Below, one piece after another: positions 981-61,715 of a stretch of DNA of 64,000 nucleotides. The notes under the pieces are model-generated. The model was not told where the DNA came from. It worked only from the letters and a program-made list of their open reading frames with translations, and searched no databases. Source of the DNA: Octopus sinensis (taxonomy: Eukaryota); contig NC_043018.1 in assembly GCF_006345805.1 (NCBI RefSeq), forward strand, positions 28,520,001 to 28,584,000, in the 5' to 3' direction. Position 1 is the stretch's first letter. Every line of letters starts with the position of its first letter. Both the position numbers and the translations under genes were made by a program.

Positions 981-1014
<34 letters not shown>

Positions 1015-1237
1015 ATCAATATAGGGTGGCAAAAAATTTCGTAGAATTTATTTGCCACCAGCGGCCTAGTGGGAAAAAATTAAATAGTCATAGACCATTT
1101 ATAAGTTCAACATCACAATCAAGGAATGGCCATAATAGGCCATTCACCCACTAGAAATAACAGCCAAAGCTTCAACCGCAAAATAACAATAATTCCGCAA
1201 ACCAGGAGAAAATTAAAAAAAAACATTTACCCTGTAA

Positions 1238-1342
1238 TTTCTTATACGATGCACCGTTTCATCTATTGTTTAATGGTAAACTAACCTGATTAAATTAAAT
1301 CAAGCCAATCTTCCATAGGCCGATAGATTCGTCAGTAAGTAA
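1238..1342 (-). ncRNA. Type I hammerhead ribozyme (inverted copy, subfamily A)
   Basis: Minus strand: ttactta-CTGACGA-atctat...atagat-GAAA-cggtgcatcg-TA/taagaaa, with one mismatch in stem I. Confidence 0.8.
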
Positions 1343-1519
1343 CAGCCAGATCCGAGCAGATATTATCACGAGGCACCTCTATCCCTGCCTCGGCAATATC
1401 TGACCTAAAATTTTCAAATCATCGCACTCGCGCCAAATTTATCGGCAGCAAATATAAGCCGCCGATTCCCGAGGCAGGGATAGAGGTGCCTCGTGATAAT
1501 ATCTGCTCGGATCTGGCTG

Positions 1520-1624
1520 TTTCTTACTGACGAATCTATCGGCCTATGGAAGATTGGCTTGATTTAATTTAATCAGGTTAGTTTACCATTAAACAATAGA
1601 TGAAACGGTGCATCGTATAAGAAA
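1520..1624 (+). ncRNA. Type I hammerhead ribozyme, unit 1
   Basis: Stem I tttctta (1520-26)/taagaaa (1618-24); core CTGACGA 1527-33; stem II atctat/atagat (1534-39/1596-1601) enclosing 56 nt; GAAA 1602-05; stem III cggtgcatcg; predicted GUA cleavage after 1617. Confidence 0.9.
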
Positions 1625-2004
1625 TTACAGGGTAAATGTTTTTTTTAATTTTCTCCTGGTTTCCGGAATTAATGATATTTTGCGGTTGAAGCTTTGGCTG
1701 TTATTTCTAGTGGGTGAATGGCCTATTATGGCCATTCCTTGATTGTGATGTTGAACTTATAAATGGTCTATGACTATTTAATTTTTTCCCACTAGGCCGC
1801 TGGTGGCAAATAAATTCTAGGAAATTTTTTGCCACCCTATATTGATTAATTATGAATTTTCTGGTTAATTCCGTAATGGAATCGGCGGCTTATATTTGCT
1901 GCCGATAAATTTGGCGCGAGTGCGATGATTTGAAAATTTTAGGTCAGATATTGCCGAGGCAGGGATAGAGGTGCCTCGTGATAATATCTGCTCGGATCTG
2001 GCTG

Positions 2005-2109
2005 TTTCTTACTGACGAATCTATCGGCCTATGGAAGATTGGCTTGATTTAATTTAATCAGGTTAGTTTACCATTAAACAATAGATGAAACGGTGCATCG
2101 TATAAGAAA
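2005..2109 (+). ncRNA. Type I hammerhead ribozyme, unit 2
   Basis: Same motif as 1520-1624, shifted by 485 bp. Confidence 0.9.
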
Positions 2110-2488
2110 TTACAGGGTAAATGTTTTTTTTTAATTTTCTCCTGGTTTGCGGAATTAATGTTATTTTGCGGTTGAAGCTTTGGCTGTTATTTCTAGTGGG
2201 TGAATGGCCTATTATGGCCATTCCTTGATTGTGATGTTGAACTTATAAATGGTCTATGACTATTTAATTTTTTCCCACTAGGCCGCTGGTGGCAAATAAT
2301 TCTACGAAATTTTTTGCCACCCTATATTGATTAATTATGAATTTTCTGGTTAATTCCGTAATGGAATCGGCGGCTTATATTGCTGCCGATAAATTTGGCG
2401 CGAGTGCGATGATTTGAAAATTTTAGGTCAGATATTGCCGAGGCAGGGATAGAGGTGCCTCGTGATAATATCTGCTCGGATCTGGCTG

Positions 2489-2593
2489 TTTCTTACTGAC
2501 GAATCTATCGGCCTATGGAAGATTGGCTTGATTTAATTTAATCAGGTTAGTTTACCATTAAACAATAGATGAAACGGTGCACCGTATAAGAAA
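2489..2593 (+). ncRNA. Type I hammerhead ribozyme, unit 3
   Basis: Same motif; stem III is the perfect palindrome cggtgcaccg. Confidence 0.9.
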
Positions 2594-2858
2594 TTACAGG
2601 GTAAATGTTTTTTTTAATTTTCTCCTGGTTTGCGGAATTAATGTTATTTTGCGGTTGAAGCTTTGGCTGTTATTTCTAGTGGGTGAATGGCCTATTATGG
2701 CCATTCCTTGATTGTGATGATATATATATATATATGTAGGAAATAGTAAGAAGTGAAAAAACTACAGAAGGCTTGTTTTAAAAGGTTAAAAAATATATAT
2801 TTGAGTCAATATGTCTGAAGAATATTATAAATTTTTTTCTTACAATGACATAGTTTAG

Positions 2859-2898
2859 AAGAAATGACCGGTTTCGCGTTTAGCTTTTCAAATTTCTT
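2859..2898 (-). ncRNA. Decayed minimal type I hammerhead in the PLE 3' region
   Basis: Minus strand: aagaaat-TTGAAAA-gc taaac gc-GAAA-ccgg-TC/atttctt. Stem I is a perfect 7 bp; the core differs from CTGAAGA by two transitions. Confidence 0.7.
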
Positions 2899-3007
2899 AC
2901 ATCGTTATGTTTATGTTGAGAAGAGTTATCGTTATGTTTATGTTGAAAAGAGTTCTAGATAAGGGGAGGTAATAAGTGATTTCTTCCGGTGTAAGGGAGA
3001 TAATCGC

Positions 3008-5290
3008 TTAAAATTGTTTGCCTTTCCTTTGGGGTGAATTTCTCTGTATAAGTATGTTGGAATGGTTAAGTCTGGGCTTGTACTTATCAATGAAGAATGT
3101 TTCCTTGTTTAGTCTAATTTGTGTTGGTGTTCCGATAGCACATTGGTAAAATGGAAAGATTAAAAATTGTGGTAGTAGTTGCTTTGCGCATTTCTCAATG
3201 TGCTCACTAATAGGTATCATTCTGTATTCTGGGAATGCAATCTGTTGTCAATGCAGTGTGCATCTACGTCTGAGTGATAGTCCCGTGGATCCCACGTAGT
3301 CTTGGTGGCAGCCCGAGCATTTTATGACATAAATTATGTTTTCAGAGGCACAAGTAAAATTAAATTTGATCTTGAATTTCTGTCCCTCTTTGAAGAGGAA
3401 TTCTGATCCTTCTAGCAGGTTTGGACATGTTGCACAGTTCGATCTACCACATTTTTTTACTTTTGCATCCGTAATTTCAGAAAACAATTTTGCCTTTGTG
3501 AGAATCTTTTTAAGTGATTTAGGCTGTTTGTAGCTTTTAATGATTTGGTGTATGTTTAGAATTTCCTTTAATTTTGGGTTTTTATGAAGTATTGGTAAAT
3601 TCTGGGTGATGATGGTGAAGGCTTCTTTGTTTCTGGGGTTGTATGTGGATATGTAAGGTAGTATTTTCGGGGAAGGTGTGTTGTTGTCTTGAACTTTTCT
3701 TAAAGTTTCTATGTTGATTTCTGTTGCACGTCTGATCCCATCCTCTATGAGTTGAGCTGGGTAATGTCTGTCAATTAGGGTGTTTTTGAGTTCTTGCAGT
3801 CTAAAGTTCCTGGTATTTTGTTCTGACACTATTGTGCATATCCTTCTTGCAAGGTTGAAGGGGGAGTTTGTTTTAGTGTGTCTTGGGTGGCATGAATTAA
3901 AAAGAAGGTATTGTTTGGCGTCTGTGGCTTTGTAAAAAAAATGTCTGTTTCTATTTTAAGGTTAATTTTTTTAATTAGTCTATCCAAGAATGGGAGCTCC
4001 TTTTAGTTGTATTCCATTGTGAACTGTATATTTGGGTTTATGCTGTTCAATAGGTTTTTAAATTTTAGGAGTTTATCTGTGTTTTCATTGCAGAGTATAA
4101 AACAATCGTCCAGGAATCGTTTCCAATTCTCTTTTATGTATTGAGAGAGGGGGTTTCCAAAGATTGATAAAGATTCCTGGTAAATGATTATTTCCAGGTA
4201 GCCCATTGTTAGGTTTGCAATGACTGGTGCTGCCCTTGTACCCATGGCAATTCCAGATTTTTGACGGTAAAATGTATTGTCAAACATGAAGTGGTTATTA
4301 TGAAGGATAAATTCAATTGATTTAGTAATGAATTCTTTACTGATCCGTTTTGGTATTTCTTCCGGAAATTGGTCCAGCCAGAACTGTATTGCCTCCAGTC
4401 CATAATTATGAGGTATACTGGTATATAAGTTAACTACATCAAATGAAACCATGATTGTTTCTTCCTTGGCTTTTTTTGGAAGGTGGTTTAACACATCTAA
4501 GTCATCTCTGATATGGCTATCGATATGTTTAAGGAAGGGTTTCAGGAGGATGTCCATAAATAGACTTAGTCTGTGTGTTTCACAGGTTGGGCCAGCTACA
4601 ATGGGTCGTAGTTTTAGGTCCCCCGGGTTAGGTGTGTGTATGTATGTCTTTGGTGATTTTTTAATGGTTTCATTTATAATTTGGCTTTTATGAATTTTTG
4701 GCAGACCATAGAAAAGGCTAGGTTTGCATTTAAAGTTTGTTAGAAAGTCAATCTCTTTGGTTGTCAGTTCCTTTCCATGGGTTTTAATTAGTGAGGACAG
4801 AGTTTTCATTATTTTTTGCGGGGTGTAGTTGGTAATTTTTTCATAATATTGGTTGTCATCAAGCAAGGAAATTACAAGATTTCTATAGTATGATGTATCC
4901 ATTATTACAACTGCATTTCCCTTATCTGCTTCCTTAATGGTTATATCTTCATCATTTTGAAGTTCTATCAGTTCCTTCCATTGTGTAGTGTTAAAATTTG
5001 AGTTAACTTTCTGTTTATGTATAGTATGGTAGGGAAAGTTCTCAATGTGGTTGCAGAATTCGTCAAGATCTTTATTTCTTCCTCTGTGGGGGATGTGTTC
5101 ACTTTTGTTCTTGACTAGTGATTCATCTTCAGTATTGAAACTGGTTGATGCTTCTGCTAGTCTTAATGTTCTGCAAAATTCTGTTATATTATCCTTGAAT
5201 TCATTTAGGTTGGCTCTGCGTGGAGTTGGTGTAAATTTGAGCCCTTTTGAGAGGATGTCAATTTTTATGTTAGAAAGAGGTTTGGTTTAA
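3008..5290 (-). pseudogene. PLE reverse transcriptase + GIY-YIG endonuclease, broken by stops/frameshifts
   Basis: ORF pieces 4003-4902 (RT), 3248-3829 (thumb/linker/GIY-YIG start) and 3008-3220 (GIY-YIG end) are collinear. There is a stop after IQFTMEYN and frame changes near 3.9 and 3.24 kb. Confidence 0.9.
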
Positions 5291-14198: not shown

Positions 14199-15157
14199 AG
14201 GAAAGTATTTTAGGACGAATATAAGACCTATATCGGCGATGTTTCGCTTGTCGTAGCACATGTTTCCGTCGATTTCCGTAAAAAACTTTTATTTTTTACA
14301 TAAGTAATGAGAGCGAAAGAGACTAAGAGAAAGCGATTGTATGACGAGGGTTTCTTTTGAAGTTACCGTGCATGGGACGCATTGATGTACATGTGTGTGT
14401 GTGTGTGTTTGATGGAGTGTGGGAGACAGACAGTGTTGTGTAAGTAAGTGCTTCTGTTAGTGTGTGTGAAGAGACAGAGAGAGTAATGTGTGAAAGAGAG
14501 AGATAACTGACATTTTTTAACTCGTTTATGTGTATATGTATGTATGCATGTATGTGTTGGTGTGTGTGTATTGTATGTGTGTGTGTATGTATGTATGTAT
14601 GGCCGATTCAGTGTTTACATTTTTTACGGAAATCGACGGAAACGTGTGCTACGACAAGCGAAACATCGCCCCTATATCCAAGTAGCAGAAAGATCGCCCA
14701 AAAGTGTATATAGATATTTAAATGTATTGATATATTCATCTATACACAGATGTATGTATAATGTGTGTGTATATATTTCCATACACGTAACCATTCACTC
14801 CGCACAAAGTTTTTTAGGACGAAAATAAGATCTAAAGTTATCTCTAAGTAGCACAGAGATCGCCCAAAAGTGTATATAGATATATAAATGTATTTATATA
14901 TTCATCTATGCACACATGTATGTATAACGTGTGTGTATATATTTCCATAGAGGTAACCATTCACTCCATACAAAGTTTTTTAGCACGAAAATAAGATCTA
15001 AAGTTATCTCTAAGAAACAGAAAGATCGCCCAAAAGTGTATATAGATATTTAAATGTATTTATATATTCATCTATACACACATGTATGTATAATGTGCGT
15101 GTATATATTTCCATAGAGGTAACCATTCAATCCATACAAAGATTTTAGGACGAAAAT
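14199..15157. repeat. ~55-bp inverted repeat around a microsatellite spacer, followed by ~3 tandem 166-bp units
   Basis: 14230-14286 is the reverse complement of 14620-14672; gatcgcccaaaagtg at 14692, 14858 and 15024. Confidence 0.8.
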
Positions 15158-15158
15158 A

Positions 15159-15998
15159 TTTATATATAAAAGAAAGGTTGTGTGTCTGTCTACTCCGATT
15201 TAGATTCCTAACTACTCCCACATTTTGCGATGCAGTTTAACCAAAACCGGGTATCTTATAGTCGTGATTCATATCGAGCCCTTCTGGGTATTAGCGCGCG
15301 TCTACGATGAGTCTATGATTTTACAAATAATTTACCATCATTTTTTCCATTTTAATGCATATTTTTTAAAATAAACGGAAGTAACTCTCAAACTTCACAC
15401 CAATATGCGTGCTCATATGCGACGTAATATCACATCAGCAGCATTTTCTCACACCCTCCTTGCACTTGGCGAAGGCCAAATACCAGGGGATGAAAATGGT
15501 AATATTGCCATCGATTCCATTTGTACCATTGTTAAGACGCCTTCTGATCTCAGAGATGCAGTGTTCCCAGATCTACAAGCTAATTATCAGAATATGGATT
15601 GGATTGGCAAAAAGGCTATACTGGCCCCGAGGAATAAAACTGTTCACCATATTAATGATGAAATGCTAAAACTCATTCCTGGGGAAGTCTATGTATATCA
15701 GTCTGTCGATACAACTCCTGACCCGAGGACGTCATCAACTATCCAATAGAGGTACTCAATTCCTTTGAGCACCCCGGACTACCACCACACTTTCTCAAAC
15801 TTAAAGTTGGTGCCCCTATAATGCTCATCAGAAATTTGGTTCCCCAAAACATTCAATGGCACACGTTTGATCGTTAAGTCCTTATCTCCCCCGTAAGCTT
15901 ATATCAATATTTGCCTGAATAATCATCATAATTCAGTGCAATCATTAACAGTACTTTCAAGCAATTCAGCCCCGAGCAACGCCGGGCAATTCTGCTAG
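15159..15998 (+). mobile_element. Internally deleted Helitron with a PIF1-like helicase fragment
   Basis: Helicase motifs (AILAPRNKTV..IN, VDT, GLPPH.LKLKVGAPIMLIRNL, NGTRLIV) at 15405-15895; 3' hairpin cccg-agcaacgc-cggg followed by CTAG (15995-98) and T; AT-rich 5' end t(t)tatatataaaag. Confidence 0.85.
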
Positions 15999-16040
<42 letters not shown>

Positions 16041-16042
<2 letters not shown>

Positions 16043-16758
16043 CAAATTGAGGAACGGCTATAATAGGCCGTTCGACCCACTAGAAAAGCAGCCAGGGCTT
16101 CAAACGCAATAGTAGTAATTCCGAAGCCCTGGCTGCTTTTTCTAGTGGGTCGAACGGCCTATTATAGCCGTTCCTCAATTTGTTGTTGAATTTATTAATA
16201 GTCTCTGACTATTTCCTTTTTCTCACTAGACCGCTGGTGGCACAATAATTTCTATTGAATTTTTTGCTACCCTAATATTGATTAATTGATAATTTTGTGA
16301 TTAATTCCGAAATTGAATCGGCAGCTTATATTTGCTGCCGATAAATTGGCGCGAGTACGTTGATTTTGAAAATTTTAGGTCAGATATTGCCGAGGCATTA
16401 AGGCAGCTGCTTCGTGTAATTTCTCTCCCTCCTGTCTCCTTTACTGATGAATTGCGTTGGCCTTTGGAAGATTGACTTGATTTAATTTAATCAGGCTGGT
16501 TTACCATTAAAAAACACTGAAACAATGCATTGTCTAAAGATGAACAGGGTAAATGTTTTTCAATTTTTCCTCTGTTTCCGGAATTACTACTATTTGCGGT
16601 TGAAGCCCTGCTGCTTTTTCTAGTCGGTCGAACGGCCTATTATAGCCGTTCCTCAATTTGTTGTTGAATTTATTAATAATCTCTGACTATTTCCTTTTTC
16701 TCACTAGACCGCTGGTGGCAAAATAGTTTCTATTGAATTTTTTGCTACCCTAATATTG

Positions 16759-16761
<3 letters not shown>
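16041..16761. mobile_element. Retrozyme-like array, subfamily B: 83-bp inverted 5' piece plus ~1.3 units on the plus strand
   Basis: Homologous to 1011-2719; inversion junction at 16123/16124; (TA)n on both sides. Confidence 0.85.
16439..16539 (+). ncRNA. Type I hammerhead ribozyme, subfamily B
   Basis: cttta-CTGATGA-...-GAAA(16519-22)-caatgcattg (perfect palindrome)-TC/taaag; predicted GUC cleavage after 16534. The base of stem II is weak. Confidence 0.75.
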
Positions 16762-16800
<39 letters not shown>

Positions 16801-16804
<4 letters not shown>

Positions 16805-17556
16805 CAATAATAGGGTAGCAAAAAATTCAGAATTTATTTGCCACCAGCGGCCTAGTGGGGAAAAGGAAATAGTCAGAGACTGTTAATAAATCAACAGCAA
16901 AATTAAGGAACGGCCATAATAGGCCGTTCAACCCACTAGAAATAGCAGCCAAGGCTTCAACCGCAAAAAAGTATTAATTCCGTAAACAAGGAGAAAATTT
17001 TAAAAAAAAACATTTACCCTGTTATACTTTATACAATGCATCGTTTCATCAATTTTTTAATGGTAAATCAGCCTGATTAAATTAAATCAAGCTAATCTTC
17101 CATAAGCCAACAGATTCATCAGTAAAGTAGGCCAGACGGGAGAGATATTTTCACGAGGCAGCACCACTACTGCCTCAACTATATCTAACCTAAAAATTTT
17201 CAAATCATCGTACTCGCGCCAAATTTATGGGCAGCAAATATAAGCTGCCGATTCCATTTCGGAATTAAACAGAAAATTCATAATTAATCAATATAGGGTA
17301 GCAAAAAATTCAGAAATTATTTGCCACCAGCGGTCTAGTGGGAAAAAGGAAATAGTCAGAGACTATTAATAAATTCAACAGCAGAATTAAGAAACGGCCA
17401 TAATAGGCCGTTCAACCCACTAGAAATAGCAGCCAAGGCTTCAACCGCAAAAAAGTATTAATTCCGTAAGCCAGGAGAAAATTTAGAAAAAAAATTTACC
17501 CTGTTATACTTTATACAATGCATCGTTTCATCTATTTTTTAATGGTAAATCAGCCT
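16801..17556 (-). mobile_element. Retrozyme-like array, subfamily C: ~1.6 units, sense on the minus strand
   Basis: agggtagcaaaaaatt at 16812 and 17295 (period 483); homologous to subfamilies A and B; (TA)n flanks. Confidence 0.85.
17025..17129 (-). ncRNA. Type I hammerhead ribozyme, subfamily C
   Basis: Minus strand: tacttta-CTGATGA-atc...gat-GAAA-cgatgcattg-TA/taaagta, with a 7-bp stem I. Confidence 0.85.
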
Positions 17557-19194
17557 AATATATATATATATCCTCTTCCACGTAAGTTTTATCTTAATAA
17601 TTATGATGCGCAATCTTAACCTTACTGTCTCTATTTTTCTAACATTGCTGCCCCCTCTCGCTCATTCTTCATTTTTTCTGGTTTTCTCTACCATTCTCTC
17701 CCTTTCACCGTTCCCTTTCTCTTACTCCTCCTCCACATTCTCCTCCCTCTCGTCACTGCCCCCCTCTCTCTCATTCTTCATTCTTTCTGTTTTTGTCTAC
17801 CATTCTCTCCCATTCACCGTTCCCTTTCTCTTACTACTCCTCCTCCTCCTCCTCCTCCCTCTCGTTGCTGACATGTGAGCAGAGTCCTGTCTTTCTGACC
17901 ACACCCTTCAACGAGTATAGACGGCATCCTATCCCTTTCTTATGTCGTTGTTGTCACGCGTTCAAAATAATTTTTCTTTCGTTCGGCTTAACGTCCATAT
18001 TACTGTTATTCTACTTGACCTGTCGTTTACTGTTTTTATTTTTATTCGTACTTTTACTGTCTTGTATTCTTTTTACAGTCCTGTTTTTGTTACCACTTTT
18101 ACCCCTCCGCAAAAAATCTCAAATTTTATTTAATTTGATTTGCGGGAAGGACCGTTTCACCAAAGTCGTGTCTCGCCTTTACCTTCGAAACGCGGAGTAG
18201 ACGAAACAGAGGAGGCTGAAGAAGGGGAATTTTCCTTGTGTTGTATGTCCTGTACCCTGTTTTTTCGTTGTTTTAAAAAATGTCCGTTTCCATGTTCTGT
18301 TTTTATGTTTTCGTTTCTCATTGTGTTCGGCGTTTTTTTGGTGTCCTGTACCTATATATGGATGTATATATACATATAGATGTAGGTCGGTACATATATG
18401 TATGTATATATGCATATGTTTCATTTATTATTTTGTTATATATATATTAAATGGCGGAATCAAGCGATGAAGGAAGAAGTAAAGATACAGAAAGAGAGAG
18501 AAAGAGAGAAAGAAAGAAAGAAGAAAGAAAGAAAGAAAGAGAGAAAGAAAGAAAGAAAGAGAGAAAGAAAGAAAGAAAGAAAGAAAGATCGTGTTCATGG
18601 GAATTAAAATTAATAAAAATATTCATACGTGTGTATTTCATATCATAACAGGATTGTTGTTGAATAAGAAAACAGTAAAGAACCAGCTGTTTCTTTTACG
18701 TTATTCGTCTCTCTAATTCCCCCAGAGACTTTTTAGACCTCTGCATCTGTTACTACACTTAATGACAGAAAACAGTCCTCTATCATTACGTATGTTTACT
18801 AATTATGCTCGTTAATTACATCTCAAATATTAATTCCGGTAATAATTCAACCACAAAATTAAGTATTCCATAAAGAAAAAAAAAACATTGTAAAAATCAT
18901 TAAAATATATTTTCTGTTTTTTTTAATTTTTATTTTGTTTCTTTTGTTCTTAATGCTCTTCGTGATAATGGTCGACAGACGAAAGTTTCTGACACAATTT
19001 GGTGAATTTCTATTCGATAAATAGTTGGTTCGTATCATGTTAAAAGTAGCTATTATTTGTTGTCGATGAAAGAAATATGCATTTTCTCTCGTGGAAATTA
19101 AGGCTATTTGAAGTTAAATCCAGGAATAATTTGAAAGAAATTTTTTGTAATGTGCGTGAATAGATAAGTAAGATGCTGGTTTTTTACGTATGTT

Positions 19195-20165
19195 TGAACG
19201 AGTGTCTGTGCTTGAGTGTTGTGTGTGTGTGGAGTGTGTTTCTTTACTTGAGTGGTGCGTGTCCGTGATTGAGTGTCTGTATGCGTTTCAGTGCGTGTCC
19301 TTGCTTGAGTGTCTTTGAATGTTTGAGTGCGTGTCCGTGTTTGACTGTCCGTGTGTGTTTGAGTGTGTGTTCGAGCTTGAGCATCCGTGTGTGTTTGAGT
19401 GTGTGTTCGTGGCTGAGTGTCAGTGAGTGTTTGAATGCGTGTCCGTACTTGAGTGTCTGTGTGTGTTGAGTGCGTGTTCTTACTTCAGTGTCTGTGTGCG
19501 TTTGAGTGTGTGTTCGTGCTTGCATGTTCGTATGTGTTTGAGCGTGTTGAGTCCGTATGCGCGCTTGTGTATTTGTGTCTGGTTGCGTGCGAGTCTCTAC
19601 TTGAGTGTCTGTGTGTCTTTGAGTGCGTGTCTGTGCTTGAGTCTCAGTGTGTGTTTGAGAGCGTGTTCCTGCGTGAGTGTCAGTGTGTGTTTGAGTGCGG
19701 GTCCGTGCTTGAATGTCTGTGTGAGTTTGAGTGCATGTTCGTGCTCGAGTGCCTGTGTGTGTTTGAGTGTCTGTGTACCTTTGAGTGCATGCTCGCGCTC
19801 GAGTGTATGTGTGTGTTTGAGTGTCTGTGTGCCTTTGAGTGCCTGTTCGCGCTCGAGTGTCTGTGTGTGTTTGAGTGCGTGTTCGTGCTTGAGTGTCTGT
19901 GTGCGTTTAATTGCATGTTCGTGATCGAGTGTCACTGTGTGATTCAGTGCGTGTTGTGCTTGAGTATTGGTGTGCGTTTGAGTGTGTTCGTGTTGCATGT
20001 GTATGTGTGTGTGTGCGTGTTGAGTGCGTGTGCGCGCTTGTGTATTTTTGTCGGGTTGTGTGCGTGTCACTATTTGAGTGTCAGTGTGCTTTGAGTGTGT
20101 GTCCGTGCTTGTGTGTCTGTGTGTGTTATTGAGTGCGTGTCCATGCTTGAGTGTCTATATGCGTT
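19195..20165. repeat. Degenerate ~36-bp GT-rich minisatellite
   Basis: Repeats of about gtgtgtttgagtgcgtgttcgtgcttgagtgtct, which generate spurious 12-aa periodic ORFs. Confidence 0.85.
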
Positions 20166-24960: not shown

Positions 24961-25350
24961 CTGCAAAATCTTTAATTTAAATTAATCAATTTACCTTGGT
25001 TTATATCATCATGATGATATGAAATTAGGATGAAAATGCGTTATACAAAATTATCCATGATAAAAAAGAATATTTAACATTTTTGTAATGAGTTAGAAAA
25101 AGAATCGAATATGTATATTCAATGCATCGCCTTAGATTTATTCGATTTAAAATTCAAACTTATAGCGCCAGCCTGATTTATCAGAAATGATTATCTCCCT
25201 TAAAATAACTGCCACTTGGTCAACACGAACTTTACATTTCACATAATCATTACTACCACTACTAACCTAAACACAGTCAATTTCTTGAGATTAATTTAAA
25301 CCAAAAGATAGATGAGTACTAGTCATATAGAAAACCTAAATAGGAAATTG

Positions 25351-53204: not shown

Positions 53205-53580
53205 TCCAGATATTTTGTCTGTCGTTACGTTTTGAGTTCAAATTCCGCTGAGGTCGACTTTAACTTTCATTCATTCGGGGTCGATTAAATTAAGTACCAG
53301 TTACGCACTGGGGTCGATATAATCAACTTAGTCCGTTTGTCTGTCCTTGTTTCTCCTCTCTGTGTGTAGCCCCTTGTGGGCAGTAAAGAAATAGGTATTT
53401 CGTCTGCCGTTACGTTCTGAGTTCAAATTCCGTCGAGGTCGACTTTGGCTTCCATCCTTTTGGGGTCGATAAAATAAGTACCAGTTACGCAATGGGGTCG
53501 ATGCAATTGTCTTAATCCCATTGTCTGTTCTTGTCTGTCCCCTCTATGTTTAGTCCTCTGTGAGCAATAGAGAAATACAT
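53205..53580 (+). mobile_element. SINE family B dimeric 184-bp units
   Basis: Junction aaagaaataggtatttcgtc near 53390. Confidence 0.8.
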
Positions 53581-54791
53581 ATTTCGTTTTTTGACGTCTA
53601 TTTTTAGCATAAAAGGGATCCATATAGTGATCTCTCATATTGTTTATGTTTAATATAATTCTTGGTCCTCTATACACATGACTGTAAAAGAACATTTTAA
53701 ATATTTTTAACGTTCAGTAACAAAAAATATCCGTTAGTAAAGAGCTACCAGTACAACTTGAATATCTCGTCTACCAGCAATTTCCGTGAAGGCGCAGGGA
53801 CCTAGTGGTTTGGGCATTTTATCCACAATCATAAGATCGTACTTTCTATTACGTACCGGATCATTCATTGCGTTCTCGGGCAAAACTCTTCTTTCCATGT
53901 TGCTCTAGTCCAGTCCACTCAGCGACTGGCCGGCATCCTGTTCAATGGGGAATTTTGTGATCTCAACATGGAAAACCGTGAAACAAGCTCTGTCGGTTTT
54001 AGGGCCCGAGAGAGCAATGTCAAGAAGATTATAAACATATTCGTAATTTACCGATTTCAAAGTCAGTATCTGCTTGATTTGAACACAGAACCTAGAAATT
54101 CCGGGCTCTAAAACGTTCTAAAATATAAAATTTATCACAGAGATTTCTTAAAGAATGAAAAACAGAATCCAACCCTATTAGATCCCCCAAACATCTCTCG
54201 GAGTTTATGCCAATTTAAAATCTTCACTTTTCTTAATAATACAGAAAAAAAATATTACGTCCTGCAATATTTCACTTCATTGCAAGAGAATTCAACAATT
54301 TAAACAGAGATACTTGAAGAAATGTTATGATCGGTGCCAATCACTTTAATTGTTGTCACTCGTTTTACGTTTAAACTTCTATAAATCTATTTTTTTAATA
54401 CCATTTCGAAATCCACTTTTCTATATCTCCTCCTGTTTATTTCTTTCTAGAATATTCTCAATATACTTGTTTCATAAGTGCGTATTTCATGACTGAAGTT
54501 ATCAAATCGATTTTAAAACTATTCTTTCTTCTTCTATATATATAGTTTTTTCTTTTCCAAAATATGATGCAAAGCAAAATATCGTGTTTAATACAGTTGA
54601 TTTTTCTTCAATGATCAACTATCGAAATCACCATATCAAGATAATTCTGTTTCGTTTTGTTTTGCTTTCTCTTTTTTTAACGTATTATATCAAAATAATT
54701 ATTCAGCAACATTCCAATATTTTTATCATCCAAATATATATATATATATATAATATAATGTGTGTGTGTGTGTGTGCGTGCGTGCGTGTGC

Positions 54792-58134: not shown

Positions 58135-58560
58135 TAGTAAGGTCGATTAAATAAGTACCAGTTACGCACTGGGGTCGATATAATCGGCTTAATCCGTTTG
58201 ACCTCTCTCTGTTTAGCCCCTTGTTGGTAGTAAAGAAATAGGTATTTTGTCTGCCGCTACATTCTGAGTTCAAATTCCGCCGAGGTCGACTTGGCCTTTC
58301 ATCCTTTCGGGGTCGATTAGATAAGTACCAGTTACGCACTGGGTGGATATAATCGACTTAATCCAGTTGTTTGTCCCTTCTGTATTTAGCCCCTTGTGGG
58401 TAGTAAAGAAATAGGTATTTCGTCTGCCGCTACGTTCTGAGTTCAAATTTCGCCGAAGTCGACTCAGCCTTTCGTCTTTTCGTCAAACACTGGGATTGAT
58501 GTAATCGACTAGTCCCCTCCTCCAAAAGGTCAAACCTTGTGCCTTTAGTAGAAAGGAGTA
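58135..58560 (+). mobile_element. SINE family B multimer
   Basis: Two aaagaaataggtattt junctions (~58240 and ~58415). Confidence 0.8.
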
Positions 58561-60954: not shown

Positions 60955-61715
60955 AAGCAGTGAGCTGGCAGAATCGTTAGCACGCCGGGTGAAATGCGTA
61001 GCCGTATTTCGTCTGGCGTTACGTTCTGAGTTCAAATTCCGCCGTGGTCGACTTTGCCTTTCATCCTTTCGGAGTCGATAAATTAAGTACCAGTCACGCA
61101 CTGAGGTCGATGTAATCGACTCAAATCGTTTGCTTGTCCTTGTTTGTCCTCTCTGTGTTTAGCCCCTTGTGGGTAGTAAAGAAATAGGTATTTCGTCTGC
61201 GATTACGTTCTGATTTAAAATTTCGCCGAGGTCGACTTTGCCTTTCATCCTTTTGTGGTCGATAAATTATGTACCAGTTACGCGCTGGGATGGATGTAAT
61301 CGAATTAATCCGTTTGTCTGTCCTTGTTTGTTCCCTCTGTGTTTAGCCCCTTGTGGGTAGTAAAGAAATTGGTATTTCGTCTGGCGCTACGTTCTGAGTT
61401 CAAATTCCTCCGAGGTTGACTTTGCTTTTCATCCTTTCGTGGTCGATTAAATAAGTACCAGCTACGCACTGGGGTCGATGTCATCGACTTAATACGTTTG
61501 TCTGTCCTTGTTTGTCCTCTCTGTGTTCAGCCCCTTGTGGGTAGTAAAGAAATAGGTATTTCGTCCGTCTGACGTTACATTCTGAGTTCAAATTCCACCA
61601 AGTTGACTTTGCTTTCCATCCTTTCGGGGTCGATTAAATAAGTACCAGTTACCCACTGGAGTTGATCTAATCGCCTCCCCACCACACAATTTCAGACTTT
61701 GTGCCTATAGTAATT
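60955..61715 (+). mobile_element. SINE family B with ~3.6 internal tandem 184-bp units
   Basis: gtatttcgtc at 61004, 61188, 61372 and 61556; one head and one terminal tail. Confidence 0.88.

What the first reader, a model, noticed from the sequence alone, without database searches (positions are those of the whole stretch)
16041..17556. Two diverged subfamilies of the same element show compensatory changes in the ribozyme
Seen: the core and geometry are retained while the pairs co-vary. Stem I is tttctta/taagaaa (A), cttta/taaag (B) and tacttta/taaagta (C). Stem III is cggtgcaccg (A), caatgcattg (B) and cgatgcattg (C), always near-palindromic. The triplet is GUA (A, C) or GUC (B), and N7 is C or U. 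Inference: covariation across lineages indicates selection on RNA structure rather than a passive satellite, and the retained palindrome points to dimer-dependent cleavage. B and C are distinct variants sharing one (TA)n tract (16761-16800), which implies independent insertions.
Basis: partly seen in the sequence, partly recalled or inferred. Interest (0 to 1): 0.88.

Follow-up and report, generated by a model that had tools for sequence, protein, structure and literature searches.

The report
Octopod tandem repeat carrying hammerhead ribozymes
This is a roughly 485-base tandem repeat in an octopus-type genome whose every unit encodes a hammerhead self-cleaving RNA, a new family of the already described animal "retrozymes", inserted three separate times into (TA)n microsatellites in the manner of Penelope-like retrotransposons.

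Summary
The window holds seven copies (six full, one truncated) of a type I hammerhead motif. They sit in a ~485-bp tandem unit at two loci: 1012-2708 (variant A) and 16041-17556 (variants B and C). In 13 core columns only N7 and the cleavage-site base H17 vary. Helices I and III differ between variants through double compensatory changes and G·U intermediates. The variant A copy at 2488-2594 (A3) folds into the hammerhead as its minimum-energy structure.

The element fits the known class of metazoan non-LTR retrozymes. It is non-coding, low in GC and strongly self-paired. A degenerate Penelope-like element lies next to locus 1. All six outer ends of the three insertions abut (TA)n. Three arrays end at the same unit position, and two insertions are head-to-head, which is the published Penelope-like insertion pattern.

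Unusual points:
- Helix II is 68 nt long.
- Position 10.1-11.1 is A-U, not G-C.
- No Rfam hammerhead model matches.

Limits:
- B looks like a decayed copy.
- Dimer-dependent cleavage is plausible but not shown.
- There are only three lineages, and no copies were found outside the window.

Verdict: a new member of a known kind, of moderate interest.

The parts
984..1011 (.). (TA)n tract flanking the left end of locus 1
1012..1468 (-). Variant A array, minus orientation (about 0.94 unit). Its 3' end lies at unit position ~155 (…CCCTATATTGATTAA) next to (TA)n. It is 99.3% identical to the plus array.
1470..2708 (+). Variant A array, plus orientation (2.6 units of 485 bp, 98-99% alike), head-to-head with the minus array. 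Its outer end lies at unit position ~57, next to (AT)n.
1237..1343 (-). Hammerhead copy Ainv. Helix I is cut to 4 bp by one T>A change. Predicted cleavage between 1245 and 1244.
1519..1625 (+). Hammerhead copy A1 (helix III CGGTGCATCG). Predicted cleavage after 1617.
2004..2110 (+). Hammerhead copy A2 (helix III CGGTGCATCG). Predicted cleavage after 2102.
2488..2594 (+). Hammerhead copy A3 (helix III CGGTGCACCG). Its minimum-energy fold is the hammerhead fold. Predicted cleavage after 2586.
2720..2735 (.). (AT)n tract between the A array and the 3' end of the Penelope-like element
2738..5290 (-). Degenerate Penelope-like element. The RT is at 4006-5286. A C-terminal GIY-YIG-type endonuclease with a CX4CxxC linker is at 3011-3955. 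The frame is broken by a frameshift and a stop. It shares no sequence with the 485-bp unit.
16004..16041 (.). (TA)n tract flanking the left end of locus 2 (imperfect from 15993)
16041..16122 (-). Inverted 82-nt piece of variant B, with its outer end at unit position ~54 next to (TA)n. With the start of the B array it forms the 16041-16175 palindrome.
16123..16762 (+). Variant B array (1.3 units, 96.9% internal identity). Its 3' end lies at unit position ~155 (…CCCTAATATTGATTA) next to (TA)n.
16437..16543 (+). Hammerhead copy B. The core is intact and the triplet is GUC, but helix II is broken at its base. Nominal cleavage after 16534.
16761..16801 (.). (TA)n tract shared by the 3' ends of the B and C arrays
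16800..17556 (-). Variant C array (1.56 units, 94.9% internal identity). Its 3' end lies at unit position ~155 (…CCCTATTATTGATAA) next to (TA)n. Its 5' end is truncated inside helix II of a hammerhead.
17024..17130 (-). Hammerhead copy C1. Predicted cleavage between 17032 and 17031.
17500..17556 (-). Truncated hammerhead copy C2 (3' half only). It keeps ATAGAT as the helix II 3' strand. Cleavage position between 17514 and 17513.
17558..17571 (.). (TA)n tract flanking the right end of locus 2

Best explanation
The element is a non-coding, non-autonomous retrotransposon of the metazoan non-LTR retrozyme class, in an octopod genome.

**Shown here**
- Each ~485-bp unit encodes one type I hammerhead ribozyme.
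- Helix I is open, with 7-8 bp, an internal loop and a conserved CUG/CAG extension.
- Helix II is 68 nt long: 6 bp, an internal loop, then a 4+14-bp hairpin.
- Helix III is 4 bp including A15.1-U16.1, with a palindromic UGCA loop.
- Pairing is kept across three lineages by compensatory changes.
- The arrays have consistent junctions with (TA)n, and a Penelope-like element lies next to locus 1.

**Inferred, from the published retrozyme model**
1. The tandem array is transcribed into multimers.
2. The hammerheads cut after GUA or GUC, possibly as double hammerheads through the 12-nt palindromic helix III of neighbouring units.
3. This gives 482-485-nt monomers, which a host RNA ligase circularises into compact circular RNAs.
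4. The reverse transcriptase and GIY-YIG endonuclease of a Penelope-like element break a (TA)n microsatellite and prime on the circle at an AU-rich site (UUGAUUAA|UUAU, unit position ~155).
5. Rolling-circle reverse transcription gives tandem copies with variable 5' ends.
6. A second priming from the other DNA end, at unit position ~55, gives the inverted head-to-head segment.

Loci A, B and C are three separate insertions of different ages. A is the youngest, and B carries a decayed ribozyme.
For: **Motif and chance**
- Five copies pass a hammerhead descriptor. Shuffled windows give 0.01 hits.
- The minimum-energy fold of copy A3 is the hammerhead fold, z = -4.9.
- The hammerhead fold lies within 2.1 kcal/mol of the minimum for A1, A2 and C1.

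**Covariation**
- 94% of cells are paired and 7 pairs changed on both sides, against 0-1 in slid controls.
- Double compensatory changes give P about 2e-4 for C and 3e-6 for B.
- In helix III the states run G-C/G-C, G-C/G·U, G·U/A-U, A-U/A-U.
- In distal helix II, all four changes between A and C keep pairing through G·U.
- Only N7 and H17 vary in the 13 core columns.

**Strand asymmetry**
- The covariance model scores 105-145 bits on the hammerhead strand and 26-28 bits on the other strand.
- The monomer folds at -155.8 kcal/mol (z = -6.4), against -115.9 for its complement.

**Retrozyme traits**
- Period 485, 2.6 copies, 98% matches.
- GC 0.36-0.38.
- No stop-free stretch longer than 61 aa, and no protein homologue for the one unit peptide searched (a 59-aa stretch).

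**Insertion pattern**
- All six outer ends abut (TA)n, which covers 3.1% of the window. Three 3' ends fall at the same unit position and two outer ends at ~55.
- Arrays are 95-99% identical internally, but the B and C arms are 87% alike.
- A Penelope-like RT and endonuclease remnant sits directly across the (AT)n from the A array.

**Literature**
- Metazoan retrozymes and their circular RNA cycle: PMC7229834.
- Penelope-like partial tandems, inverted 5'-truncated copies and (TA)n bias: PMC8557442.
- Retrozymes as derivatives of Penelope-like elements: bioRxiv 10.64898/2026.07.22.740005.
Against: - No Rfam hammerhead model matches, either at the gathering score or at E up to 10 on a 201-nt slice.
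- The normally conserved G10.1-C11.1 pair is A-U here. From my own knowledge, that usually lowers activity.
- Only three lineages and seven copies are available, all from one window. B and C share two of the helix I changes, so independent events are few.
- No copy was found in 130 kb of Octopus sinensis and Argonauta hians DNA, or in the metagenome and prokaryote collections.
- The neighbouring Penelope-like element shares no sequence with the unit, and no hammerhead was found in it.
- Microhomology at the second priming site (~55) is weak.
- Cleavage, circular RNA and mobilisation are all untested.
Confidence: 0.8

Rival explanations
1. The arrays are pseudo-LTR (pLTR) fragments of an autonomous Penelope-like element family. 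On this reading they are left-over terminal repeats amplified locally, not a separately mobilised non-autonomous element.
For: - Hammerheads sit in the pLTRs of Penelope-like elements (PMC4209133).
- Xenopus retrozymes match the pLTRs of Penelope-like elements (bioRxiv 10.64898/2026.07.22.740005).
- The architecture and the (TA)n targeting are those of Penelope-like elements (PMC8557442).
- A Penelope-like remnant is adjacent to locus 1.
Against: - The unit has no similarity to the adjacent Penelope-like element.
- That element lies beyond an (AT)n tract, and the nearest array is in the opposite orientation.
- Three separate insertions consist only of 485-bp units with no ORF.
- Each unit carries a whole hammerhead, and monomer-length units are repeated up to 2.6 times.
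Confidence: 0.12
2. It is a passive minisatellite whose hammerhead-like motif is fortuitous or long dead, with no selection on RNA.
For: - No Rfam hit.
- A-U at position 10.1-11.1.
- B is clearly degenerate.
- A loose descriptor also gives unexplained single-copy hits in other octopod DNA.
Against: - Double compensatory changes are far above the null, and slid controls collapse.
- Core variation occurs only at N7 and H17.
- G·U intermediates appear on one strand only.
- Shuffles give 0.01 hits per window.
- The three insertions come from diverged source variants, which implies a lineage that kept replicating.
Confidence: 0.05
3. It is a DNA-level element that targets TA sites: either a foldback or MITE-type transposon, or cargo moved by the neighbouring Helitron. 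On this reading the inverted arrangement reflects terminal inverted repeats.
For: - A palindrome at 16041-16175 and head-to-head arrays.
- Flanking TA repeats.
- A Helitron-like helicase remnant that appears to end at 15988, just before the (TA)n (for the helicase domain; the end is read from the sequence).
Against: - The C insertion has no inverted partner.
- The ends fall at internal unit positions, not at shared terminal repeats.
- Array lengths vary from 0.17 to 2.6 units.
- The arrays lie outside the Helitron.
- The tandem same-sense units, each with a ribozyme, fit an RNA circle template.
Confidence: 0.03

Closest known systems
Metazoan non-LTR retrozymes (Cervera and de la Peña 2020, PMC7229834): coral, mussel and axolotl tandem repeats with type I hammerheads
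   Same: - Short tandem repeats, each with one type I hammerhead.
- Low GC, no ORF, LTR, PBS or PPT.
- A strongly self-paired monomer.
- Helix III with a palindromic tetraloop.
- Co-occurrence with Penelope-like elements.
   Different: - The unit is 482-485 nt, against expressed RNAs of ~170-400 nt and genomic repeats of 150-450 bp.
- Helix II is 68 nt instead of about 4 bp plus a loop.
- Position 10.1-11.1 is A-U.
- No Rfam match.
- The host is an octopod; no paper in the searched library links hammerheads or retrozymes to octopus.
- The (TA)n junctions and head-to-head structure are documented here at base resolution.
Hammerheads in the pseudo-LTRs of Penelope-like elements (Cervera and de la Peña 2014, PMC4209133)
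   Same: - Type I topology.
- Helix II larger than usual.
- Palindromic positions 15.2-16.2 and loop 3.
- Families full of compensatory changes.
- Tandem context and a proposed dimeric mode of action.
   Different: - Those motifs lie inside an RT-encoding element.
- They have minimal or no helix III and a short helix I (4-5 bp).
- They have an unpaired base between positions 9 and 10.1, and a conserved G10.1-C11.1 pair.
- Here helix III has 4 bp, helix I has 7-8 bp, there is no bulge, and 10.1-11.1 is A-U.
Newt satellite 2 and axolotl HHR_Amex1 repeats
   Same: Tandem ~330-bp repeats transcribed into self-cleaving RNAs. Helix III is weak with a palindromic loop, and cleavage is efficient as dimers.
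   Different: Helix III there has a single base pair. Here it has 3-4 bp, and copy A3 is predicted to be stable as a monomer.
Plant LTR retrozymes (PMC4918200)
   Same: Non-autonomous retroelements that spread through hammerhead-processed circular RNAs.
   Different: The plant elements have type III hammerheads inside LTRs, with PBS and PPT and 4-bp target duplications. They are mobilised by LTR retrotransposons.
Double hammerheads of avocado sunblotch viroid and viroid-like satellites
   Same: Weak helix III, with cleavage through a dimeric hammerhead during multimer synthesis. The circular monomer is protected from cleavage.
   Different: Those are infectious RNA replicons with hammerheads in both polarities. 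Here the element is genome-encoded and has a ribozyme on one strand only.

Membership tests
Hammerhead ribozyme, type I | Conserved core: C3 U4 G5 A6 N7 G8 A9, G12 A13 A14, A15.1-U16.1, and H17 not G | tested here: met
   All six full copies carry it. Only N7 (C/U) and H17 (A/C) vary.
Hammerhead ribozyme, type I | Three helices around the core, with helix I open and helices II and III closed | tested here: met
   The minimum-energy fold of A3 is exactly this. It lies within 2.1 kcal/mol of the minimum for A1, A2 and C1, but 7.9 kcal/mol above it for B.
Hammerhead ribozyme, type I | Helices supported by compensatory changes | tested here: met
   Seven pairs changed on both sides, against 0-1 in slid controls. 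P is 2e-4 and 3e-6 for double changes. Only three lineages are available.
Hammerhead ribozyme, type I | G10.1-C11.1 pair at the base of helix II (typical and highly conserved; PMC4209133) | tested here: not met
   A-U in every copy. No alternative register restores G-C.
Hammerhead ribozyme, type I | Match to the Rfam hammerhead covariance models | tested here: not met
   No hit at the gathering score, nor at E up to 10 on 201-nt and 821-nt slices. The 68-nt helix II is the probable cause, but this could not be tested.
Hammerhead ribozyme, type I | Tertiary contact between loops of helices I and II | tested here: inconclusive
   Internal loops exist at suitable places: after 7-8 bp of helix I and after 6 bp of helix II. 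No known contact motif could be assigned.
Hammerhead ribozyme, type I | Site-specific self-cleavage | not testable with these tools
   Needs in vitro transcription of monomer and dimer constructs.
Metazoan non-LTR retrozyme | Tandem repeats of about 150-450 bp, each with a type I hammerhead | tested here: met
   Period 485, 2.6 copies, and arrays of 1.3 and 1.56 units. The unit is slightly longer than the published range.
Metazoan non-LTR retrozyme | Low GC, non-coding, no LTR, PBS or PPT | tested here: met
   GC 0.36-0.38. No stop-free stretch longer than 61 aa, and no protein homologue for the one 59-aa unit peptide searched.
Metazoan non-LTR retrozyme | Highly self-paired monomer RNA | tested here: met
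   -155.8 kcal/mol, z = -6.4. The hairpins are conserved across A, B and C.
Metazoan non-LTR retrozyme | Expression as linear and circular RNAs of unit length | not testable with these tools
   No transcriptome data were available.
Metazoan non-LTR retrozyme | Co-existence with Penelope-like elements in the same genome | tested here: met
   An RT and GIY-YIG remnant lies at 2738-5290 (-). Its relatives have the RVT_1 plus GIY-YIG architecture.
Penelope-like element pLTR hammerhead | The motif lies in the terminal repeat of an RT-encoding element | tested here: not met
   The unit has no similarity to the adjacent Penelope-like element, and the arrays contain no ORF.
Penelope-like insertion architecture | Partial tandems, an inverted 5'-truncated copy at the 5' side, and a bias for (TA)n (PMC8557442) | tested here: met
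   Two of the three insertions are head-to-head. All six outer ends abut (TA)n.
MITE or foldback DNA transposon | Terminal inverted repeats shared by all copies, plus target-site duplication | tested here: not met
   The C insertion has no inverted partner and the ends are internal unit positions. The flanks show no duplication.

The most novel reading that the evidence does not exclude
This would be a cryptic structural class of hammerhead. Its features are a ~70-nt branched helix II with an invariant apical hairpin, and A10.1-U11.1. It escapes both the Rfam models and the usual RNAmotif descriptors.

It would be carried by circular RNA retrozymes that a (TA)n-specific Penelope-like enzyme copies by rolling-circle target-primed reverse transcription. 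Copying would start from a fixed AU-rich site, with twin priming producing the inverted segment.

If that is general, some Penelope-like clades reported as lacking canonical hammerheads may in fact carry such long-helix-II ribozymes. In those clades 'half cores' lie 35-50 nt apart (PMC8557442).
Probability: 0.25. Interest if true: 0.6.

Novelty: new member of a known kind. Interest (0 to 1): 0.4.

Why it matters
Which enzyme moves animal retrozymes, and how, is still argued mainly from co-occurrence and sequence similarity. These two loci add evidence at the level of insertion junctions. Three independent insertions all lie in (TA)n. All three share the same 3' junction inside the unit, and two have the head-to-head form typical of Penelope-like elements. 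One sits back-to-back with a Penelope-like element across a single (AT)n tract.

That gives a concrete, testable model: target-primed, rolling-circle copying of a circular RNA from a defined start site.

The ribozyme also shows that a hammerhead with a 68-nt helix II and an A-U pair at 10.1-11.1 is missed by Rfam. Surveys that rely on those models may therefore undercount such elements.

Tried and rejected
- **Rfam.** Four searches of the window or slices of it found no hammerhead. The many sub-threshold miRNA hits come from microsatellites and from the B/C inverted arrangement at 16659-16899.
- **Search for more copies, all negative.** Two pattern scans of JGI metagenome contigs. One scan of prokaryote genomes. 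An exact look-up and a homology search with a peptide read from the unit. BLAST and a purpose-built covariance model over 130 kb of Octopus sinensis and Argonauta hians DNA fetched through Penelope-like relatives.
- **Source record.** It could not be identified.
- **Whole-unit alignment for covariation.** MAFFT puts a 2-nt gap in the diverged helix I strand and shifts the pairs, which changes the counts. I used core-anchored positions instead.
- **Hammerhead in the adjacent Penelope-like element.** None found, and no pLTR-like repeat there.
- **Flank comparison for target-site duplications.** Nothing beyond chance.
- **Loose hammerhead-like hits in O. sinensis loci.** Five hits against 0.37 expected. 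They are single-copy in the data at hand and were not pursued.
- **CGATGCATTG at 25120-25129.** Rejected as a chance match.
Full report
**1. What is there**

The region 16041-17556 and a second locus at 1012-2708 consist of one repeated unit of about 485 bp (BLAST; Tandem Repeats Finder gives period 485, 2.6 copies and 98% matches at 1465-2719).

Locus 1 (variant A), left to right:
- (TA)n at 984-1011
- a minus-orientation array at 1012-1468
- a plus-orientation array at 1470-2708, head-to-head with the first
- (AT)n at 2720-2735

Locus 2, left to right:
- (TA)n at 16004-16041
- an inverted 82-nt piece at 16041-16122
- the plus-orientation B array at 16123-16762
- (TA)n at 16761-16801
- the minus-orientation C array at 16800-17556
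- (TA)n at 17558-17571

Whole-unit identity is 78% for A-B, 83% for A-C and 83.5% for B-C. There are therefore three lineages rather than two.

**2. The hammerhead motif**

Every unit contains, 5' to 3':
- the helix I 5' strand
- CUGANGA
- a 68-nt helix II
- GAAA
- a 10-nt near-palindrome
- U, then H (the cleavage-site base)
- the helix I 3' strand

Only one of the four A copies has CGGTGCACCG. The other three have CGGTGCATCG, which gives a G·U pair.

My descriptor scan finds five copies: 1519-1625 (+), 2004-2110 (+), 2488-2594 (+), 1241-1339 (-) and 17025-17129 (-). B fails because helix II has a single closing pair. The same descriptor gives 0.01 hits per dinucleotide-shuffled window. A strict version gives no hit in any of 200 shuffles.

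For copy A3 the minimum-energy structure is exactly the type I hammerhead (z = -4.9):
- helix I of 8 bp
- an unpaired core
- helix II of 6 bp, an internal loop, then 4+14 bp
- helix III of 4 bp with a UGCA loop
- an unpaired A17

Forcing the hammerhead fold costs this much above the minimum-energy structure:

| Copy | Cost (kcal/mol) |
|---|---|
| A3 | 0.0 |
| A1, A2 | 2.1 |
| C1 | 2.1 |
| Ainv (minus-strand A copy) | 4.3 |
| B | 7.9 |

No Rfam hammerhead model matches at any threshold tried. I attribute this to the 68-nt helix II and to A-U at 10.1-11.1, but I could not test that.

**3. Covariation**

On the seven-copy alignment, 94% of pair cells form standard pairs and seven pairs show changes on both sides. 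When the 3' partners are slid by 1-3 columns, pairing drops to 25-42% and at most one pair shows a double change.

With pairs anchored on the core:

| Compared with A3 | Pairs changed | Still paired | Double changes | P (still paired) | P (double changes) |
|---|---|---|---|---|---|
| C1 | 13 | 10 | 4 | 0.015 | 2e-4 |
| B | 14 | 7 | 6 | not significant | 3e-6 |

The nulls are drawn from random A-paired column pairs of the same units.

Further points:
- Helix III runs through G-C/G-C (A3), G-C/G·U (the other A copies), G·U/A-U (C) and A-U/A-U (B).
- The four differences between A and C in distal helix II all switch between G·U and Watson-Crick pairs.
- Such intermediates pair only in RNA of the hammerhead strand. 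In line with this, the monomer folds at -155.8 kcal/mol against -115.9 for its complement. A covariance model built from the copies scores 105-145 bits on that strand and 26-28 bits on the other.
- Of 13 core columns, only N7 and H17 vary. I estimate the chance of both variable columns falling on those two positions at about 1 in 78.
- The helix I region is among the most diverged stretches of the unit (55-65% identity). The core and the apical part of helix II are among the most conserved.

Limits: there are only three lineages, and B and C share two of the helix I changes. The MAFFT whole-unit alignment shifts helix I and changes the counts.

**4. What kind of element it is**

The unit is non-coding. 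No stop-free stretch exceeds 61 aa, and the one unit peptide I searched, a 59-aa stretch, has no protein homologue. GC is 0.36-0.38. The monomer is very strongly self-paired, with hairpins conserved among A, B and C.

These are the published traits of metazoan non-LTR retrozymes: tandem repeats of 150-450 bp, each with a type I hammerhead. They are transcribed, self-cleaved and ligated into circular RNAs, and Penelope-like elements (PLEs) are thought to mobilise them (PMC7229834; bioRxiv 10.64898/2026.07.22.740005).

The window is octopod DNA:
- A PLE lies at 2738-5290 on the minus strand. Its RT is at 4006-5286. A GIY-YIG-type endonuclease with a CX4CxxC linker is at 3011-3955. The frame is broken by a frameshift and a stop.
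- Most of its best named relatives are from Octopus sinensis, Argonauta hians and O. bimaculoides (54-63% amino-acid identity), with bivalve proteins (Mytilus, Saccostrea) interleaved among the top hits.
- Interspersed repeats match O. sinensis at 80-93%.

**5. Insertion anatomy**

All six outer ends of the three insertions abut pure (TA)n, which covers only 3.1% of the window.

The three arrays whose sense-strand 3' end faces a (TA)n tract all stop at the same unit position:

| Array | Sequence at the 3' end |
|---|---|
| A, minus | CCCTATATTGATTAA |
| B | CCCTAATATTGATTA |
| C | CCCTATTATTGATAA |

The unit itself continues with TTATGAA at this point.

In the two head-to-head insertions (A and B), the other outer end falls near unit position 55. 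Identities within and between arrays are:

| Comparison | Identity |
|---|---|
| Within A | 98.8-99.3% |
| Within B | 96.9% |
| Within C | 94.9% |
| B arm against C arm | 86.8% |

So A, B and C are three separate insertions from diverged sources and of increasing age.

Partial tandems, an inverted 5'-truncated copy and a (TA)n bias are the described insertion signature of PLEs (PMC8557442). The PLE in this window ends at the same (AT)n tract as the A array. It shares no sequence with the unit, and no hammerhead was found in it.

**6. Mechanism**

Shown here: the motif, the covariation, the tandem organisation, the junction positions and the neighbouring PLE.

Inferred:
1. The arrays are transcribed into multimers.
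2. The hammerheads cleave after GUA or GUC, at 1617|1618, 2102|2103 and 2586|2587. On the minus strand the sites are 1245|1244, 17032|17031 and 17514|17513. The nominal site in B is 16534|16535.
3. A host ligase circularises the monomers.
4. A PLE-type enzyme breaks (TA)n and primes on the circle at the AU-rich site near position 155.
5. Rolling-circle reverse transcription produces the tandem copies.
6. A second priming from the other DNA end produces the inverted segment.

On the dimer idea: as an isolated hairpin, helix III is worth -2.9 kcal/mol in A3, -0.2 in the other A copies and 0 in B and C. The 12-nt palindrome as a duplex gives -14.5 to -22.7 kcal/mol. Palindromic loop 3 is a known trait of metazoan type I hammerheads, read in the literature as dimeric action (PMC4209133). 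The idea is therefore reasonable. But a conserved hairpin with a UGCA loop is a palindrome anyway, so the sequence alone cannot decide.

**7. Comparison and novelty**

The class is known. What differs:
- the host is an octopod; no paper in the searched library links hammerheads or retrozymes to octopus
- the unit is 482-485 nt
- helix II is 68 nt, with an apical hairpin that is invariant across lineages
- 10.1-11.1 is A-U
- no Rfam model matches
- the (TA)n junctions can be read at base resolution

I file it as a new member of a known kind. No copies were found outside the window.

Noticed in passing
window 2738-5290 (-): Degenerate Penelope-like retrotransposon. [quoted passage not shown] Its 3' end meets the same (AT)n tract as the A array. 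The closest relative is 76% identical at the protein level (an ENA metagenome contig); most of the best named hits are octopod proteins at 54-63%, with bivalve hits interleaved.
   Followed up: partly
window 15375-15988 (+): Helitron-like remnant. It has the C-terminal part of a Pif1-type helicase (Pif1_2B domain at 15722-15874, E = 3e-12). It is followed by a short GC-rich hairpin and CTAG at 15985-15988, directly before the (TA)n tract that also received the B insertion. This one microsatellite therefore appears to have collected three kinds of mobile element.
   Followed up: partly
window 16659-16899, both strands: Sub-threshold matches to plant miRNA precursor models (MIR7533, MIR7723, MIR8007; 60-82 bits against gathering scores of 195-230). 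They are explained by the B and C arrays facing each other across (TA)n, which makes a long imperfect hairpin. They are not miRNA genes.
   Followed up: yes
window 2532-2551 and the equivalent position in every copy (CTTGATTTAATTTAATCAGG): The apical hairpin of helix II is invariant across A, B and C, which differ by about 20% elsewhere. It is among the most conserved stretches of the unit, and the reason is unknown. It could be a protein or RT recognition site, or a tertiary contact.
   Followed up: no
window 2112-2127 with 2567-2585 (monomer 2103-2586), and equivalents in B and C: In the cleaved monomer, the 5' end (ACAGGGUAAAUGUUUU) is predicted to pair with the 3' half of the hammerhead in all three variants. 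This alternative fold could keep the ribozyme off in the circular form.
   Followed up: no
L002:16093-16147 (+) and L004:42014-42093 (+) (Octopus sinensis): Loose hammerhead-like motifs with a 6-nt palindromic helix III (CAGCTG, CACGTG), a GUA triplet and a helix II of 28-55 nt. In 130 kb there were five loose hits against 0.37 expected from shuffles. They are single-copy in the DNA at hand.
   Followed up: partly
window 53210-53587, 58141-58482, 61004-61673, and a fragment near 880-930: Tandem arrays (period 173-184 bp, 80-87% matches) of a repeat with a tRNA-like or SINE-like look (…TTCAAATTCCGCCGAGGTCGAC…).
   Followed up: no
window 14673-15158 and 19255-20156: Other tandem repeats: a 166-bp unit in 2.9 copies, and a 36-bp GT-rich minisatellite in about 25 copies. 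The window as a whole is very rich in microsatellites, with 96 pure (TA)n tracts of at least 6 units.
   Followed up: no
window 25120-25129: An isolated CGATGCATTG identical to helix III of variant C, with no hammerhead context. This is a chance match.
   Followed up: yes
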